A DNA stretch of 64,000 nucleotides from positions 161,528 to 225,527 of the IMG/VR virus record IMGVR_UViG_3300028569_002417; one strand, given 5' to 3'. The notes below the pieces were generated by a model, which was given only the letters and a program-made list of their open reading frames with translations, was not told where the DNA came from and did not search any database. Shown here piece after piece: positions 40,592-45,560 of this stretch (its first letter is position 1; each line of letters begins with the position of its first letter). A program made the position numbers and the translations under genes.

Positions 40592-40670
40592 TGATGGATG
40601 TTGTTTTTTCACATGAATATGGCGGGGAAATAGTCTTGTTTTGAGGATTGTTTCTTTGTATTATCGGGTG

Positions 40671-41990
40671 ATGAGCAAGCAAAGATTCCTAGATGTTTGT
40701 GTCGCTTCTCTTCGTGCAAAGGGTTTGTACGAAGAGCAGCGTTATGCCAAAAGATTGAAGTGGGAAACAGAAGAGATCATTGCGAAGGAAAAGCACGAAT
40801 ATTTCCTTGATTTGTATGATAAGAAGGTGAAGTATCCTAAAAATCAAAACAATCTTTTGGTTTGTTGGCTTTTAGGTTTAGTTCCAGATCATGACATTGA
40901 GAAAGATCCTTCAAATGTATTCACGGGTGACTTGCCCGATGTAGACATTGATTATATTCCAATGGTTCGTGATTATTTGAAGAATGAATGGGCACCGAAA
41001 ACATTTGGCGAAGATTATGTTTGTAACATTGGTAACTATACGACATTTGGAATTAAATCGGCATTGATTGACATGGCTCGTGTTCATGGCGAAAGTCGTG
41101 AAGAGGTCATGGCAATCACTAAGAATCTTGATGCTAAGGATGATGAAGGCAAACCAATCACATGGGATGCAGCATTAAGGCTTGACCCTGAATTCAAAGC
41201 ATATACTGAGAAATATCCGTCAATTGCTCAAGCAACAAAAAAATTAATTAATCGCAATCGTGGCATGGGAGTACATGCTGGTGGATTGATTGTTTCGAGA
41301 ATTCCACTTCATGATCTTGTTCCTTTGGTTAAAAGGAAAGGTAATCCTCAAGCTAGTGCATGGGTAGAGGGACTACATGGGCAGGATTTGCAGCCTGTTG
41401 GCCTTGTTAAATTTGACTTACTTGTGATTAGTAATCTTTTGCAAATTGCTCGTTGTTGCGAGACTGTTAGAATCAATCATGGTGTTACTTCAATTTGTGC
41501 CAAGCCCGGAGAGCCAGATTGGTCTGATGTTGATTGTTGGAGGAATGATCCTGATTCAATTGCAATGGCTAATCGTGGTGATTTGAAATGTATATTTCAA
41601 TTTGATTCTGAGGGAATGAGGGCATTGGTTAGGGCTGGAGGAGTTGATCGATTTGAAGATTTAGTGGCATATTCCAGTTTATTCCGACCCGGCTGTATTA
41701 AATGTTTGCAAAAAGATTCTTTTGTTATGTTATACAATGGTCAAAAAGAAATAAAAAATTTGCAGCCGGGCCTTGATAATATAGCGTATCTAAATTCTCA
41801 AAGAAAAGTAAATTACACAAAAAGATATTTTGTCATAAATTCTGGTTATAAAAAAATATTGAGAATCACAACTAAAAGTGGCAAAGTCTTGCTTCTCTCG
41901 CCTGATCATCCAGTCTTGACTGATAAATTGAAATATATAAAGGCAGGAGTTCTTAAAATTGGAGATAAAGTTGGAGTAATTAAAAAATAA
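40671..41990 (+). CDS. dnaE: DnaE middle part (catalytic palm) ending in N-intein
   Basis: LPDVDIDY, GVHAGGL, GLVKFDLL, IFQFDSEG, LFRPG then intein block A. Confidence 0.92.
   Translation: MSKQRFLDVCVASLRAKGLYEEQRYAKRLKWETEEIIAKEKHEYFLDLYDKKVKYPKNQNNLLVCWLLGLVPDHDIEKDPSNVFTGDLPDVDIDYIPMVRDYLKNEWAPKTFGEDYVCNIGNYTTFGIKSALIDMARVHGESREEVMAITKNLDAKDDEGKPITWDAALRLDPEFKAYTEKYPSIAQATKKLINRNRGMGVHAGGLIVSRIPLHDLVPLVKRKGNPQASAWVEGLHGQDLQPVGLVKFDLLVISNLLQIARCCETVRINHGVTSICAKPGEPDWSDVDCWRNDPDSIAMANRGDLKCIFQFDSEGMRALVRAGGVDRFEDLVAYSSLFRPGCIKCLQKDSFVMLYNGQKEIKNLQPGLDNIAYLNSQRKVNYTKRYFVINSGYKKILRITTKSGKVLLLSPDHPVLTDKLKYIKAGVLKIGDKVGVIKK
41703..41987 (+). mobile_element. Split intein N-half (95 aa)
   Basis: CLQKDSFV (block A), GKVLLLSPDHPVLT (block B), LKIGDKV then stop. 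Confidence 0.88.
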
Positions 41991-42025
41991 TTCATATATA
42001 TCCTTGCACAGAGCGGGAGATATAT

Positions 42026-43039
42026 ATGATTTGTAAAATATGCAATAAAGAGGTATCAGAAAAATTTTATCGCCATCTAAATAGTAGTCATAAGATGAAA
42101 AAAGGAGATTATCTAAATTTGTTTCCAGAGCAAAAAGAGGAGTACAAAAGTCAAATTTCTGTTTTGTGGAACAAAGGAAAAACCAAGTGCGATGATGATC
42201 GCATCATGGCGATTGCCGATAAGATAAAAAAATTCACAGGACAGGAACACATACGAAAGCAAAGATCGGAAAACATGAAAAAAATGTATCAAAATGGTGA
42301 TATGTTGTCCCCTGAGATGAGAGCTTATGTGCAAAAAAAAGGCACAGATGGATGGGTCAAAAAGGTTAAGGAATCTTCTTTTGAAGAAAGAAAGATATTA
42401 TTAAAGAATTTTTCTGATGCTGGCAACAAAAAAATACAAGAAAATAAAATAAATCGCACGCCTGAAGATTATATGCGAATTTGCAAAAATGCCAAAGGAA
42501 AAGCTCAATATGGTAATTGTGCAGAATGCGGAAATCAAATTGTAATATGGGTTGGAGGCAAGCCACGACCTAAACAAAGATTTTGTAATCAATCATGTCA
42601 AAAAATATATCAAAAAAAACATCCTTTTTATACATTATCTCATGTTGGAAAGCATTATTTTTCAGAAAAAATGCAATGTGAATTTTATCTAAGATCAAAA
42701 TTAGAAATTTGGCTTGCAGAAATGTTAGATGTAAATGAAAAAGTGAATTCTTGGCATATTACACCATTCGCTGTAAGCTACGAGTTTCATGGAAAAAAAC
42801 GATTGTATTACCCAGATTTCATGATAAACTCAAAGTGGGTTGTTGAATTGAAATCTGGTTATATATTTGACATCGATGCCGACAAAAATAGAGCAAAGTT
42901 TATGGCTGCACAAGATTATTCAGAGGAGATAAATTGTGAGTTTTTTTATTGGCAATTTGATAATCACAATATGACAAAAAAGTTATTTGAAAAAGATCAA
43001 AGGGTGATTGATTTCTTTTCATTTTTACAGGAAGCATGA
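42026..43039 (+). CDS. Free-standing putative homing endonuclease (Zn fingers + TnsA-N-like PD-(D/E)XK)
   Basis: CKIC..HL..H, GKTK..D.RI, CAEC..FCNQSC, LRSKLE, YYPDF, VELKS; lies between split-intein halves. Confidence 0.8.
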   Translation: MICKICNKEVSEKFYRHLNSSHKMKKGDYLNLFPEQKEEYKSQISVLWNKGKTKCDDDRIMAIADKIKKFTGQEHIRKQRSENMKKMYQNGDMLSPEMRAYVQKKGTDGWVKKVKESSFEERKILLKNFSDAGNKKIQENKINRTPEDYMRICKNAKGKAQYGNCAECGNQIVIWVGGKPRPKQRFCNQSCQKIYQKKHPFYTLSHVGKHYFSEKMQCEFYLRSKLEIWLAEMLDVNEKVNSWHITPFAVSYEFHGKKRLYYPDFMINSKWVVELKSGYIFDIDADKNRAKFMAAQDYSEEINCEFFYWQFDNHNMTKKLFEKDQRVIDFFSFLQEA

Positions 43040-43040
43040 A

Positions 43041-43172
43041 ATGCTTGATTTTGAAGAAATAGTTCAGATTGAAGAGGTTGGTGAAGATGATTGTTATGAT
43101 ATTATGTTGTTAGAAAAAGACTTGTATTTGGACGAGCCAAATTTTATAGCTAACGATATTGTTGTTCACAAT
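43041..43172 (+). mobile_element. Split intein C-half (44 aa)
   Basis: EIVQIEEVGEDDCYDI...NFIANDIVVHN followed by Cys+1. Confidence 0.9.
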
Positions 43173-45560
43173 TGTGGCATGGACAAGCGTTATGTTGAGC
43201 GTAAGAAGGGTCATGAAAAATATGAAATTCATCATTTAATCAAGCCTATTCTTGAAAAAACATATGGAGTTATGATTTATCAAGAGCAAATCATGCAGAT
43301 ATTGAATGTTGTTGGTGAAATTCCTTTGAAGGATTGTGAAGCTGTAAGAAAAGCTATATCAAAGAAGAAAATAGAATCTATTGAAAAATATAAAGATATG
43401 TTTATTAAGAATGGGCAGAAAAATTTAAGTTTTACAAAAGAACAAATGGAAGAGTTTTTTAATCAAATATTGTCTTGGAGTGAATATGGCTTTAATAAAA
43501 CTTTGACCGAAGACACAATTATAAATTGTGTTGATGGCGCAAAGCAAATAAAAGACATTTGTGCCGGAGACATAGTTTATTCTATAAATGAAAAGGGAGA
43601 ACAGGTACAAACTGAAGTTGCGGCAGTTCATGATCATGGCGTGGTCAATGTTGTGGAGGCGACATTTGATGACGGCTATGTTGTGAGGTGTACTTATGAT
43701 CACAAATTTTTGACTGAAGAAGGACAAGTTCCTCTTTGGTTAATTGTTAAAGACAACATGGTTGTGCTGAGTTCTCCGTTGGGAGAACATGCAGGGGAAG
43801 AAAAAGAATGGTCATCTGGCAAGGTGTGGACAAATAATAAAAACTCTGGAAAAGATGAAAGAGCATCGAGAGAATTGCAAGGAGTGCAACTATCTGAAGT
43901 GGAGGCTGGAGGGAAAGAAATACATTTCCAGATGCGGAGTGGAATTTCTGCGTTCACCTCAACTGGTCCAAAATCATCAGAAAACTGGAGAAATGAATTC
44001 GGAGTGGTTCACTTCACTCCAGAGTATGCTTCTATCACCAATACCCGGAATTTGGTGTCTAGGAGAATATTACGAGTTGTGACCGTGGGTAAAAGACAAT
44101 GTTACGATCTTGAAGTCGCCATCTCAACTCACAACTTTATTCTTCCGAATGGAATAATCACATCGAACTCACATGCTGTGGCTTATACTTACATCAGCAT
44201 GTATCTTTTGTATTTGAAGGTTCATTACCCTCATGAATTTTATGCTAGCATGTTATCATGTGAGACTTTGGCTGAGAAGATAAAAGACATTAAGATGGAG
44301 GCTAAGATACATGGTGTTGAGATGCATCGTCTTGACATTAACAAATCTGGCATTAATTTTGAGCTTAAGGATAATTTAATTTATTTTGGTTTTAGTAATG
44401 TGAAGGGTATAGGAGAGGGTCCTGCTCAAAAGATAGTGGCTGGTCAGCCGTATCGTAGTTTTGAGGATTTCCTTTATCGATGTGGAACAGATGCTTCGAT
44501 GTTGAAGCCGATACTTGGTTTAAGATGTTTTAGGGATCGTGATCCAATTACTTTGTGGAAATTTGCAGAGCATTTCAAAGAATGTTTTAAGAAAAACGAA
44601 GAGAAGCGCAAGCGTTTTGGTACTTCTTTGGAGAGGTACGAAGACGAGTTAAGGGAGCTTATTCCTGAAGTTGAATTCAAATTATCTGATTTGAGTGGTG
44701 ATTCACCATTTGATAACATTGAGTATCAGCAAAAATATGATAAGGAAGAGGAGATTACTGTTCTCAAGGAGTATGAGTGTAAGGAAGGGGATGGTGTTGG
44801 AAGGATTGAGATGGTATATGTTCCTGTTGATGGGACTGATGTTGTGATTGAGCGTGAGGTGATGAGATATTACAAGAAGATTGCTACTAAGAGGCCTTGG
44901 AACAGGTGGAAGGATCTTAAGAATCTTTGGAATAAAAGAAAGAGAACTATAGCGAGATTTTCTGATGCTGATTTCAAGACATTGCCAAGATTGATTGATT
45001 TCGATCCAGACCAATATGATATACCTAAGGATTTGGCTAAGGAGTTTAAGAATCCGGTTGTTTCAGAAGAAAAGTTTTATGGATTTGCTTGGATTCATGA
45101 GCTTGAGAGAAGTCCTGATTATAGAGGGAATTTGACATTTGATTCTTTGAGAAGTGACATTGACAGTTCTTCTGGTCCTGTTGAGTTGAGGGTTAAGAAA
45201 GTAATTCAGATGACTAGTAAAAAGGGTTCTACTTATTCTCAGGTATTGGCGGAAGATGTTACTGGTCAAGAGAATAAGATTAATGTTTGGTCTGATGACT
45301 GGGATCGTTGGCATAAAGAATTAAGTGAAGGTAACTTAATTAGGATAAGATTGCAACCTCCTTCTGGTGGTTTCAATACATTCTTGTTGGAATCAAATCA
45401 GAATGGCAAGTATAGAGGTCAGAAGAGATATCGAGACAAGGATGATGATCCTCGTGTTATTGTCATGAGAGTTGGCTTAAAAGAAGAAGAGAAATTCATG
45501 ACAGATGAAGAGGTTTTGGAACTTTTTAATAATTTAGGTATGGAAAATAAAAATGACTGA
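43041..45560 (+). CDS. dnaE: DnaE C-terminal part, starting with C-intein and containing a cis intein
   Basis: ILEKTYGVMIYQEQIMQ, YGFNK..SHAVAY, YLKVHYP, DINKS, VKGIG, OB-fold end. Confidence 0.92.
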   Translation: MLDFEEIVQIEEVGEDDCYDIMLLEKDLYLDEPNFIANDIVVHNCGMDKRYVERKKGHEKYEIHHLIKPILEKTYGVMIYQEQIMQILNVVGEIPLKDCEAVRKAISKKKIESIEKYKDMFIKNGQKNLSFTKEQMEEFFNQILSWSEYGFNKTLTEDTIINCVDGAKQIKDICAGDIVYSINEKGEQVQTEVAAVHDHGVVNVVEATFDDGYVVRCTYDHKFLTEEGQVPLWLIVKDNMVVLSSPLGEHAGEEKEWSSGKVWTNNKNSGKDERASRELQGVQLSEVEAGGKEIHFQMRSGISAFTSTGPKSSENWRNEFGVVHFTPEYASITNTRNLVSRRILRVVTVGKRQCYDLEVAISTHNFILPNGIITSNSHAVAYTYISMYLLYLKVHYPHEFYASMLSCETLAEKIKDIKMEAKIHGVEMHRLDINKSGINFELKDNLIYFGFSNVKGIGEGPAQKIVAGQPYRSFEDFLYRCGTDASMLKPILGLRCFRDRDPITLWKFAEHFKECFKKNEEKRKRFGTSLERYEDELRELIPEVEFKLSDLSGDSPFDNIEYQQKYDKEEEITVLKEYECKEGDGVGRIEMVYVPVDGTDVVIEREVMRYYKKIATKRPWNRWKDLKNLWNKRKRTIARFSDADFKTLPRLIDFDPDQYDIPKDLAKEFKNPVVSEEKFYGFAWIHELERSPDYRGNLTFDSLRSDIDSSSGPVELRVKKVIQMTSKKGSTYSQVLAEDVTGQENKINVWSDDWDRWHKELSEGNLIRIRLQPPSGGFNTFLLESNQNGKYRGQKRYRDKDDDPRVIVMRVGLKEEEKFMTDEEVLELFNNLGMENKND
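43500..44168 (+). mobile_element. Cis intein (223 aa) at YGFNK|SH, begins with Thr
   Basis: TLTEDT, CTYDHKFLT, CYDLEV..HNFILPNGIITSN|S. Confidence 0.88.
43789..44082 (+). CDS. Overprinted alternative-frame ORF inside the intein (Cys/His-rich)
   Basis: GGGAG RBS + ATG; spans the intein linker and ends just inside the C-terminal splicing region. Confidence 0.45.
   Translation: MQGKKKNGHLARCGQIIKTLEKMKEHRENCKECNYLKWRLEGKKYISRCGVEFLRSPQLVQNHQKTGEMNSEWFTSLQSMLLSPIPGIWCLGEYYEL

What the first reader, a model, noticed from the sequence alone, without database searches (positions are those of the whole stretch)
43781..44082. Overprinted ORF hidden in the intein linker
The linker in the DnaE frame reads like off-frame sequence. 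Another frame has its own RBS and ATG and encodes a basic Cys/His pattern (RCG..EHRENCKEC..RCG..H), spanning the linker. It may be an alternative-frame homing endonuclease remnant or a small Zn-binding protein; no nuclease motif is visible.
Basis: partly seen in the sequence, partly recalled or inferred. Interest (0 to 1): 0.6.

Follow-up and report, generated by a model that had tools for sequence, protein, structure and literature searches.

The report
Relic of out-of-frame intein endonuclease
The hidden small ORF is real: it is the cut-down leftover of a homing-endonuclease gene that related lake phages carry complete, in a second reading frame, inside the same self-splicing DnaE intein. 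It is a decaying relic, not a new protein, and this kind of arrangement has recently been described for other inteins.

Summary
Window 43789-44082 is a 97-codon +1-frame ORF with its own GGGAG and ATG. It lies in the linker of a 223-aa DnaE mini-intein (43500-44168).

Related freshwater jumbo-phage contigs carry the same intein at the same FNK|SH site with a linker of about 1 kb. That linker has no stops in the DnaE frame, and its +1 frame encodes a 285-330 aa protein. The protein has tandem zinc fingers and a Vsr-like (EDxHD-type) nuclease fold.

In eight such alleles no stop-risk codon context carries a T (0 of 64-119 each). Substitutions follow the HEN frame's codon pattern. So both frames are kept open, but only the HEN frame is conserved as a protein.

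The same HEN family also occurs free-standing between split-intein halves ("fractured" DnaE).

The window allele lost about 165-170 codons, including the nuclease core. A lake strain about 99% identical still reads on into HEN sequence at that junction. Other independently shortened inteins carry broken remnants.

Out-of-frame HENs in inteins are already published, so this is a new variant of a known kind.

The parts
43500..44168 (+). Intein #2 of DnaE (223 aa), inserted between FNK and SHAVAY. It is contiguous with DnaE and begins with Thr.
   Evidence: boundaries; Pfam Intein_splicing, E 6.9e-11; HINT fold, best match Npu DnaE intein 4kl5_A, E 7.6e-9, TM by target 0.86; an intein-less relative reads FNK|SHA.
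43500..43796 (+). N-terminal splicing domain of the intein (residues 1-99; block B is TYDH).
   Evidence: pLDDT 93-98; invariant H68, K69, F70.
43797..44018 (+). Intein linker in the DnaE frame (residues 100-173). It is predicted disordered and poorly conserved, but has no stops.
   Evidence: pLDDT below 50; identity to relatives 24-40% in this frame against 44-60% in +1; all 5 strain SNPs in the ORF are non-synonymous in this frame.
44019..44168 (+). C-terminal splicing domain (residues 174-223; blocks F and G; ends in Asn, followed by Ser+1).
   Evidence: invariant D203, H211, N212, F213, N223.
43781..43785 (+). Shine-Dalgarno-like GGGAG, 3 nt upstream of the +1-frame ATG. It is encoded by the Leu-Gly-Glu codons of the intein frame.
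   Evidence: GGAG lies 3-7 nt before the ATG in all six DnaE full-length alleles examined: L003, L005, L011, L012, L021, L022.
43789..44082 (+). +1-frame ORF of 97 codons plus TGA: a truncated relic of a zinc-finger / Vsr-like homing-endonuclease gene.
43819..43887 (+). Zinc-finger-like motif 1 of the relic (C-x12-H-x3-C-x2-C), intact.
   Evidence: coordinates; the repeat is conserved in full-length relatives; beta-beta-alpha fingers in the model of the full protein, with CTCF-like matches.
43927..43977 (+). Zinc-finger-like motif 2, truncated. Its closing C-x2-C is lost at the deletion.
   Evidence: (strain X17 continues here with LAEHHRVCEKC).
43966..43975 (+). Deletion junction. About 165-170 codons of the HEN are missing here: the end of finger 3, the helical region and the nuclease core.
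   Evidence: window aa 1-62 match L005 HEN aa 1-53 plus scraps, and window aa 63-97 match L005 aa 229-263; X17 contigs leave the window at exactly 43966 and 43975.
43981..44079 (+). C-terminal tail of the HEN (the KTGEM...SPIPGIWCLGEYYEL stretch). It overlaps the start of the intein's C-terminal splicing domain.
   Evidence: 63% identity to L003; the P-G...G..Y motif is conserved even in free-standing family members.
44080..44082 (+). TGA stop of the relic. It is premature relative to full-length alleles (which read ...YELCPW...) and is polymorphic.
   Evidence: 44082 A>C in run X17 gives TGC Cys in +1 and Thr195Pro in the intein frame.
43041..45560 (+). DnaE C-terminal gene piece. It holds IntC of split intein #1 (43041-43172), the finger domain, intein #2 and the HHH domain.
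40641..41990 (+). DnaE N-terminal gene piece, ending in IntN of split intein #1 (41703-41987). This is context only.
42026..43039 (+). Free-standing endonuclease-like ORF (337 aa, TnsA-like / DUF7487) between the halves of split intein #1. This is the 'fractured gene' layout. The ORF is unrelated to the HEN of intein #2.
   Evidence: PF24308 E 1.1e-6, PF08722 E 7.8e-5; no similarity to the L003 HEN.

Best explanation
The +1 ORF at 43789-44082 is what is left of a homing-endonuclease (HEN) gene that is overprinted on the linker of a DnaE intein.

In the intact form (shown in relatives), one stretch of about 0.9-1 kb is read in two frames. [quoted passage not shown] The ribosome reads through it, and the whole intein is inferred to be removed afterwards by protein splicing. 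In the +1 frame, from its own Shine-Dalgarno and ATG, it encodes a protein of about 285-330 aa. This protein has three tandem zinc fingers, a helical region and a Vsr-like (EDxHD-type) nuclease domain. It is inferred to cut intein-less DnaE alleles and so drive homing of the intein.

In the window's phage, an in-frame deletion of about 165-170 codons removed the end of finger 3, the helical region and the whole nuclease core. A later point change made a premature TGA. The relic is still open because the deletion had to be a multiple of three (DnaE must be read through), because the parent sequence had no stops in either frame, and because the deletion is recent.

The relic cannot be a nuclease. 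It may still be translated, since SD and ATG are intact, but it is most likely on its way to decay. The element now works as a plain mini-intein.

Shown here: homology, dual open frames, frame-specific constraint, folds, the deletion junction, strain polymorphism. Inferred: translation of the +1 ORF, cleavage and homing by the full-length protein, and splicing with Thr at position 1.
For: 1. Full-length alleles occupy the same site. L003 has a 428-aa intein, no stops in the DnaE frame, and a +1 ORF of 315-325 aa. L005, L011, L012, L021 and L022 show the same, and L014 and L016 show it in other host genes. L023/L024 look the same, but scaffold N-gaps shift their frames, so they were not counted. 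About 40 database DnaE proteins called as one gene carry 386-467 aa inteins with this linker.
2. The +1 product is a real protein family. It has 17 homologues and conserved motifs. The AlphaFold model has pLDDT 86.6. The N-terminal part matches tandem zinc fingers (Ros finger 2jsp, E 0.0026). Residues 178-311 match Vsr 1cw0_A (Z 10.1, 119 aligned) and I-Bth0305I 3r3p_B (Z 8.2, 90 of 98 aligned).
3. There is selection to keep the DnaE frame open. In eight alleles, none of the 64-119 codons that precede AA/AG/GA-starting codons ends in T, against 25-35% elsewhere (Fisher p from 3e-8 to 3e-17). Synonymous shuffles give 9-20 stops on average and never zero in 5000 trials. Split alleles L006, L008 and L009 have 30-55 stops in that frame.
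4. Protein-level constraint lies in the HEN frame. In all 28 allele pairs, differences rank HEN position 3 > 1 > 2. Amino-acid identity is about twice that of the DnaE-frame linker.
5. [quoted passage not shown]
6. The deletion is recent. Contigs of lake run X17 are 98-99% identical up to 43966 and from 43975 on. They then continue with letters that read in +1 as LAEHHRVCEKC and MLLRLSLSLF before HQKTGEM, which are family motifs. X17 also has TGC where the window has TGA.
7. Remnants in other shortened inteins decay: stops in L020, L025 and L026, and no ATG in L027.
8. The intein's splicing domains are intact and the linker is disordered.
Against: There is no direct evidence that the +1 frame is translated, either in the window or in full-length alleles. 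The one metatranscriptome contig set (X20) covers only 43509-43793 and may be DNA carry-over.

Nuclease activity and target site are inferred from fold and context only. Sequence profiles did not reach Vsr or I-Bth0305I, and Pfam and PHROGs give nothing.

The relic is open in all three near-identical strains sampled, and 2 of its 5 SNPs are synonymous in +1 against 0 of 5 in the DnaE frame. Residual constraint on the relic therefore cannot be excluded with so few changes.

Confidence: 0.85

Rival explanations
1. The 97-aa product is a functional small zinc-finger DNA-binding protein. It would have been kept after loss of the nuclease, for example to bind the DnaE homing site or regulate something.
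For: SD and ATG are intact and finger 1 is complete. The ORF is open in the three near-identical strains. Of its 5 strain SNPs, 2 are synonymous in +1 and none in the DnaE frame. The L017/L018 remnant (76 aa) is also open.
Against: Independent shortened inteins do not keep such a product. L020, L025 and L026 have stops, L027 lacks the ATG, and P0040-42 lost the whole linker. The deletions have different endpoints, so no common small protein is preserved. Finger 2 is truncated, and the tail is a torn-off piece of the nuclease domain. The stop position is polymorphic. The deletion is too recent for openness to mean anything. No homologue of similar length was found.
Confidence: 0.08
2. It is a chance ORF: an off-frame run without stops, produced by the purine-rich, somewhat GC-richer composition of the linker.
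For: Runs of 100 or more codons occur 8 times in +1 frames of this genome. A minus-strand ORF of 85 aa (43700-43957) also overlaps the region and has no family hit.
Against: Both ends of the ORF align specifically to a conserved protein family. Start and SD positions are conserved. The codon-position substitution pattern follows the +1 frame. A longer allele exists in a near-identical strain.
Confidence: 0.02
3. In the full-length alleles the endonuclease is not made from its own start. It is made by a +1 ribosomal frameshift out of the intein frame, giving an intein-N/HEN fusion. The window ORF would then be the relic of such a recoding site.
For: In the window and in L003 the +1 frame is open for some codons upstream of the ATG. 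The two frames are on one mRNA.
Against: GGAG 3-7 nt before an ATG is conserved in the six DnaE full-length alleles examined. In L005, L026 and L027 a +1 stop lies directly upstream of the start region. Free-standing family members start at the same N-terminus. No slippery motif was looked for or seen.
Confidence: 0.04

Closest known systems
Non-canonical inteins with the homing endonuclease in another frame or strand. These are the actinophage inteins (bioRxiv 10.1101/2025.01.02.630785), the cyanobacterial dnaX intein with a +2-frame LAGLIDADG (bioRxiv 10.64898/2026.09.14.751524), and Gorbalenya 1998 as cited there.
   Same: The intein is contiguous. Its central region is open but unstructured in the host frame. 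A HEN ORF with its own SD lies in another frame. Purifying selection is on the HEN frame. Mini-inteins and intein-free alleles co-exist (searches compared).
   Different: In those texts the HEN types and frames are: antisense LAGLIDADG, antisense VSR-like, sense frame-3 endonuclease-VII-like, and sense +2 LAGLIDADG. Here it is a sense-strand +1 Vsr-like nuclease fused to tandem zinc fingers, in DnaE of large freshwater phages. The window copy is a deleted relic, not an intact HEN.
Fractured genes: split inteins with a free-standing Vsr-like endonuclease between the halves (Dassa et al. 2009, PMC2677866)
   Same: The HEN family is the same (Vsr-like), as are the host gene type (phage DnaE) and the aquatic viral origin. 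Relatives L008, L009 and L006 have exactly this layout at the same FNK|S site, and L006 has a 58-nt overlap of the HEN 3' end with IntC. Intein #1 of the window's own DnaE is fractured too, although its free-standing endonuclease ORF belongs to a different family (TnsA-like/DUF7487).
   Different: In the window and in L003, L005, L011, L012, L021 and L022, intein #2 is not split. There is no stop between the halves, and the HEN overlaps the intein ORF over its whole length instead of 6-69 bp. That paper's model foresees in-frame fusion (step IIIa) but not an out-of-frame contiguous form.
I-Bth0305I / EDxHD homing endonucleases (Taylor et al. 2011, PMC3239194; PDB 3r3p)
   Same: The full-length relatives have a Vsr-like catalytic fold (Z 8.2 to 3r3p_B, Z 10.1 to Vsr 1cw0_A). 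The acidic/His residues are invariant: D37, E46, D48, H52 and D74 of alignment A4. The build is bipartite, with DNA-binding and nuclease parts.
   Different: The DNA-binding part is made of zinc fingers, not NUMOD/HTH. The protein is encoded inside an intein in a second frame, not in a group I intron. No sequence-level match was found. The window relic lacks the catalytic domain altogether.
HEN-less mini-inteins (for example Npu DnaE, Ssp DnaB mini-intein)
   Same: The window intein's folded parts superpose on them (4kl5_A, rmsd 1.8, TM by target 0.86). As in the classical homing cycle, the HEN has been lost.
   Different: It keeps a 74-residue disordered linker that still carries an open second frame. 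It begins with Thr rather than Cys or Ser.

Membership tests
Intein (HINT domain, class 1 type) | Nucleophilic residue at intein position 1 (Cys or Ser in known natural inteins) | tested here: inconclusive
   Position 1 is Thr in the window and in at least 15 relatives, and Ser in others. Thr has a hydroxyl, and an S1T mutant of another intein splices. However, natural Thr1 inteins were reported as unseen in 2009 (PMC2807308).
Intein (HINT domain, class 1 type) | Block B Thr-x-x-His, block F/G motifs, C-terminal Asn followed by Ser/Thr/Cys | tested here: met
   TYDH is at residues 65-68. H68, D203, H211, N212, F213 and N223 are invariant in 22 sequences, and Ser is at +1.
Intein (HINT domain, class 1 type) | HINT fold | tested here: met
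   In the AlphaFold model, residues 1-99 and 174-223 have pLDDT of 88 or more. Foldseek's best match is the Npu DnaE intein 4kl5_A (E 7.6e-9), and 58 intein/Hedgehog hits have E of 1e-3 or less.
Intein (HINT domain, class 1 type) | In-frame insertion in a conserved host motif, with the host sequence continuous without it | tested here: met
   The host reads FNK / SHAVAY around the insert. A related intein-less contig reads EYGFNKSHACSYTY. Pfam DNA_pol3_finger and HHH_6 flank the insert.
Intein (HINT domain, class 1 type) | Protein splicing activity | not testable with these tools
   This needs expression of the precursor and detection of ligated exteins.
Vsr-like / EDxHD homing endonuclease (the window's +1 ORF itself) | Vsr-like nuclease domain with the conserved E, D, H, D residues | tested here: not met
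   The window ORF aligns only to HEN residues about 1-62 and 229-263 of L005 numbering. The segment carrying the VD...IEVDG..HF...D motifs is deleted.
Vsr-like / EDxHD homing endonuclease (full-length +1 ORFs of relatives) | Vsr-like nuclease fold and conserved catalytic residues | tested here: met
   Z is 10.1 to Vsr 1cw0_A and 8.2 to I-Bth0305I 3r3p_B over residues 178-311. D37, E46, D48, H52 and D74 are invariant in A4. Residue-by-residue equivalence to I-Bth0305I E170/D196/H213/D222 is inferred from order and spacing, not from an alignment.
Vsr-like / EDxHD homing endonuclease (full-length +1 ORFs of relatives) | Site-specific cleavage of the element-free allele | not testable with these tools
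   This needs purified protein and a target DNA assay.
Non-canonical intein with out-of-frame HEN | Host frame open through the HEN region; HEN in another frame with its own start; constraint on the HEN frame | tested here: met
   This is met for full-length relatives. For the window, both frames are open and SD/ATG are present. Constraint on the relic is undecided, with only 5 SNPs.
Fractured gene (split intein + free-standing HEN) | Stop codon after IntN, separate HEN gene, and a new start for IntC | tested here: not met
   Intein #2 of the window is one uninterrupted ORF. The feature is met in relatives L006, L008 and L009 and for intein #1 of the window.
C2H2 / Ros-MucR-like zinc finger (N-terminal repeats of the HEN) | Beta-beta-alpha fold with four Cys/His zinc ligands | tested here: inconclusive
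   The full-length model has three beta-beta-alpha units with weak CTCF-type matches (E 1.8e-3). The family profile hits Ros 2jsp at E 0.0026. The window keeps one complete C..H..C..C unit. Metal binding was not tested.

The most novel reading that the evidence does not exclude
Beyond the relic itself, a widespread lineage of inteins in large freshwater phages encodes a zinc-finger / Vsr-like homing endonuclease entirely in the sense +1 frame of the intein linker. Every potential stop in the host frame has been purged by synonymous-site selection.

The same endonuclease family sits free-standing between split-intein halves at the same DnaE site. The overprinted composite has also moved into at least two other host genes.

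One insertion site would then show the whole series: empty site, fractured gene, overprinted contiguous intein, and decaying mini-intein. The overprinted form would be a missing, stable intermediate between fractured genes and ordinary inteins. The probability given is that this is both real and not yet described for this HEN type and frame.
Probability: 0.5. Interest if true: 0.6.

Novelty: new variant of a known kind. Interest (0 to 1): 0.5.

Why it matters
For annotation, gene callers treat these loci inconsistently. Some call one 1250-1370 aa DnaE. Others call DnaE-N, a "hypothetical protein" and DnaE-C. Knowing that the linker is dual-coding settles what is there.

For intein biology, the locus family gives a clean natural example of two-frame coding. 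One frame is selected only for the absence of stops (0 of about 780 risk contexts across eight alleles). The other frame is selected as a protein.

The family also links the fractured-gene layout of Dassa et al. with the recently reported out-of-frame HEN inteins, at one insertion site. Empty, full, split and decayed alleles co-occur in lake phage populations, so the homing cycle could be studied there.

The Thr1 splice junction is a further testable oddity.

The window's own ORF is an ordinary decaying relic.

Tried and rejected
- blastn of the region against the phage collection found no match.
- A word-based protein search with the 97-aa ORF found no candidates. This says little, given the length window and the deletion.
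- Pfam gave nothing for the relic or the minus-strand ORF 43700-43957. Pfam and PHROGs gave nothing credible for the full-length HEN.
- Sequence profiles against PDB reached only the Ros zinc finger. With the nuclease domain alone they gave only chance-level hits. The Vsr relationship came from structure only.
- Foldseek on the whole HEN model listed only zinc-finger proteins.
- The search for related loci with the broad alignment A2 failed for lack of a conserved stretch. The closer set A3 worked.
- The window's other endonuclease-like ORF (42026-43039) was tested as a possible relative of the overprinted HEN and rejected.
- ORF length as evidence on its own was rejected after the genome-wide count. 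The longest alt-frame runs in the genome are collagen-like repeats, not further overprinted genes.
- DNA for mini-intein allele P0048 could not be fetched.
- A HEN tree separates a free-standing/split clade from a clade of overprinted alleles plus the split L006. It does not resolve whether overprinting or splitting came first.
- A class 3 (WCT) intein mechanism was considered for the Thr1 junction. It was set aside by reading the motifs: the usual Asp, not Cys, sits in the block F YDLEV motif, and Phe, not Trp, follows the block B His. No tool test was run.
- Complex prediction and the large representative search were not used, because no claim here rests on binding or on the absence of relatives.
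Full report
SETTING

The window is part of a 225-kb IMG/VR virus record estimated at 52% complete, so it comes from a phage with a very large genome. Near-identical DNA occurs in freshwater and lake metagenomes from at least seven studies.

The region holds a bacterial-type DNA polymerase III alpha (DnaE) gene in pieces:
- 40641-41990: the DnaE N part, ending in the N half of split intein #1 (41703-41987).
- 42026-43039: a free-standing TnsA-like/DUF7487 ORF.
- 43041-45560: the C half of intein #1, more DnaE, a second and contiguous intein, and the rest of DnaE.

The finding concerns intein #2, at 43500-44168. It is 223 aa and lies between FNK and SHAVAY.

THE OBSERVATION

The +1 frame is stop-free for 103 codons and holds an ORF at 43789-44082, preceded by GGGAG at 43781-45. 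Its product has one complete and one truncated Cys/His unit.

An AlphaFold model of the intein folds residues 1-99 and 174-223 with confidence as a HINT domain. The best match is the Npu DnaE intein 4kl5_A, at E 7.6e-9. Residues 100-173 have pLDDT below 50.

ORF length alone would not carry the case. Eight +1 runs of at least 100 codons occur in crude genes of this genome, and the longest lie in collagen-like repeats.

WHAT IT IS

A scan of viral contigs with the intein found L003, from a 459-kb contig. There DnaE is one 1347-aa ORF with the same intein at the same site, but the intein is 428 aa long. Its linker of about 1 kb has no stop in the DnaE frame and reads like noise. The +1 frame holds a 315-325 aa ORF.

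The window ORF aligns to the two ends of that ORF (47% over 59 aa and 63% over 35 aa). The long ORF has 17 database homologues, all unnamed.

Every homologue whose context I fetched lies in a phage DnaE gene between the finger and HHH domains. They fall into four layouts.
- Truly fractured: IntN followed by a stop, a separate HEN gene, then IntC with a new start (L008, L009). In L006 the HEN 3' end overlaps IntC by 58 nt.
- Contiguous and overprinted: L003, L005, L011, L012, L021, L022. L023/L024 look the same, but scaffold N-gaps shift their frames, so they were not counted.
- Contiguous and overprinted in two other host proteins: L014/L015 and L016.
- Shortened inteins with remnants: the window, L017/L018, L020, L025, L026, L027.

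About 40 further database DnaE proteins, called as single genes of 1236-1370 aa, contain 386-467 aa versions of the intein. A dozen contain independent short versions of 132-242 aa.

THE +1 PRODUCT IS A REAL ENDONUCLEASE-LIKE PROTEIN

With the family alignment, the L003 product folds at mean pLDDT 86.6.
- The N-terminus has three beta-beta-alpha units that match tandem zinc fingers. The family profile hits the Ros finger 2jsp at E 0.0026.
- A helical region follows, containing the most conserved sequence motif.
- Residues 178-311 form an alpha/beta domain. Its best structural matches are Vsr endonuclease 1cw0_A (Z 10.1, 119 residues) and the homing endonuclease I-Bth0305I 3r3p_B (Z 8.2, 90 of 98 residues).
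- Asp, Glu, Asp, His and Asp are invariant in this domain.

This is the "Vsr-like" family that Dassa et al. found free-standing in fractured genes, including a DnaE locus. Taylor et al. later named it EDxHD.

BOTH FRAMES ARE MAINTAINED, FOR DIFFERENT REASONS

A stop in the DnaE frame needs a HEN codon that ends in T followed by one that starts with AA, AG or GA.

In the eight overprinted alleles, 0 of 64-119 such contexts carry the T, while 25-35% of other codons end in T (Fisher p from 3e-8 to 3e-17). Synonymous shuffles give 9-20 stops on average and never zero in 5000 trials. In the split alleles the same frame holds 30-55 stops, with no bias.

Across all 28 pairs of overprinted alleles, differences are most frequent at HEN codon position 3, then 1, then 2. 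Amino-acid identity is roughly twice as high in the HEN frame as in the DnaE-frame linker.

So the HEN frame is under protein-level selection, and the host frame is selected only to stay open. GGAG 3-7 nt before the HEN ATG is conserved in all six DnaE full-length alleles examined.

THE WINDOW ALLELE

Relative to its closest full-length relative with DNA (L005), the window keeps HEN residues 1 to about 62 and about 229-263. It lacks the end of finger 3, the helical region and the nuclease core.

The ORF ends at a TGA where long alleles read Cys-Pro-Trp. In the intein frame this is a Pro-to-Thr change.

Contigs from lake metagenomes were laid on 43300-44400, with these results.
- Runs X3 and X11 have the window's deleted form, with 2-5 differences.
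- In run X17, contigs that are 98-99% identical stop matching at 43966 and resume at 43975. Their overhangs read in +1 as LAEHHRVCEKC and MLLRLSLSLF before HQKTGEM. These are the family motifs expected on either side of the missing segment.
- The X17 contig that resumes at 43975 carries 505 more bases beyond the junction. X17 also has TGC instead of TGA at 44080-82.

The deletion and the premature stop are therefore recent events within one phage lineage.

Run X11 also holds a contig from a relative about 85% identical that joins 43499 to 44183 and reads FNK|SHA, which is an intein-free site.

Among the 5 strain SNPs inside the ORF, all are non-synonymous in the intein frame. In +1, two are synonymous, two are non-synonymous and one touches the stop. 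That is too few to judge constraint.

The other shortened inteins arose by different deletions, and their remnants are mostly broken. This is what neutral decay predicts, and it argues against a conserved small zinc-binding protein.

MECHANISM

Shown:
- the anatomy of the locus;
- dual coding in relatives;
- the fold of the HEN;
- intact splicing motifs in the window intein;
- co-occurrence of empty, full and deleted alleles.

Inferred:
- The precursor DnaE is translated through the linker and the intein splices out.
- In full-length alleles the HEN is translated from its own start and cuts empty DnaE sites, so that repair copies the intein in.
- In the window this drive is lost, and the ORF is a translated or silent relic.

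WHAT IS KNOWN

Inteins with the HEN in another frame or on the other strand are published.
- Gorbalenya 1998, as cited in the two preprints below.
- The 2025 actinophage survey reports antisense LAGLIDADG, antisense VSR-like, and a sense frame-3 endonuclease-VII-like HEN.
- The 2026 dnaX preprint reports a +2 LAGLIDADG with an SD and lower dN/dS in the HEN frame.
- The 'ShiLan' hidden HNH is known to me from its title and abstract only.

Full-text searches for overprinting or different reading frames in inteins found nothing closer.

A sense +1 Vsr-like zinc-finger HEN in a contiguous DnaE intein does not appear in those texts. Nor does its link to the fractured form at the same site. I therefore call it a new variant of a known kind. 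The window's ORF itself is a decayed member.

DIRECTION OF EVOLUTION

A HEN tree separates a free-standing/split clade from a clade that holds all overprinted alleles plus the split L006 (both 100/100). The order of events is unresolved.

OPERATORS' NOTES

No alternative genetic code was used. No step had to be referred.

Noticed in passing
window 43500-43502 (and relatives): Intein #2 begins with Thr. At least 15 distinct relatives also start with Thr, and others start with Ser. A 2009 paper states that Thr1 had not been seen in natural inteins, although an S1T mutant splices (PMC2807308). These essential DnaE genes suggest that natural Thr1 inteins work.
   Followed up: partly
window 41703-43172: The same DnaE is also a 'fractured gene'. 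Split intein #1 has IntN at 41703-41987 and IntC at 43041-43172. Between them lies a free-standing 337-aa TnsA-like/DUF7487 endonuclease-like ORF (42026-43039), whose TGA lies 1 nt before the IntC ATG. So one gene carries two inteins with two unrelated endonuclease types in two different layouts.
   Followed up: partly
L014:1522-3801 and L016:1-4086: A related intein with the overprinted +1 Vsr-like HEN (no stops in the host frame) sits in two host proteins that are not DnaE. In L016 a second intein-like insert (starting CLDAETE) seems to lie upstream in the same protein. The host proteins were not identified.
   Followed up: partly
window 43499/44183 (run X11): A lake metagenome contig from a relative about 85% identical joins the two extein sides and reads EYGFNK|SHACSYTY, which is an intein-free DnaE allele. 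In X11 the summed contig depth over the exteins (about 96-139) is about ten times that over the intein (10.5). This fits many intein-less or differently occupied relatives, but summed depth is a weak measure.
   Followed up: partly
G000 genome 138348-144538 (outside the window): Two large genes with collagen-like/low-complexity triplet repeats have the longest alternative-frame open runs in the genome (up to 292 codons). This is a by-product of the repeats, not overprinting.
   Followed up: partly
window 43700-43957, minus strand: An 85-aa antisense ORF overlaps the linker. It has no Pfam family and no further support. It is probably a by-product of the purine-rich sense strand.
   Followed up: partly
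L005, L006, L021, L023 against P0020-P0078: Gene callers treat overprinted loci inconsistently. Some call one long DnaE, and others call DnaE-N, a hypothetical protein and DnaE-C from an internal start. Some loci catalogued as split may in fact be contiguous.
   Followed up: partly
window 43509-43793 (run X20): Metatranscriptome contigs at 99% identity or more cover the N-terminal part of the intein and stop 5 nt into the +1 ORF. This cannot distinguish RNA from DNA carry-over and says nothing about translation.
   Followed up: no
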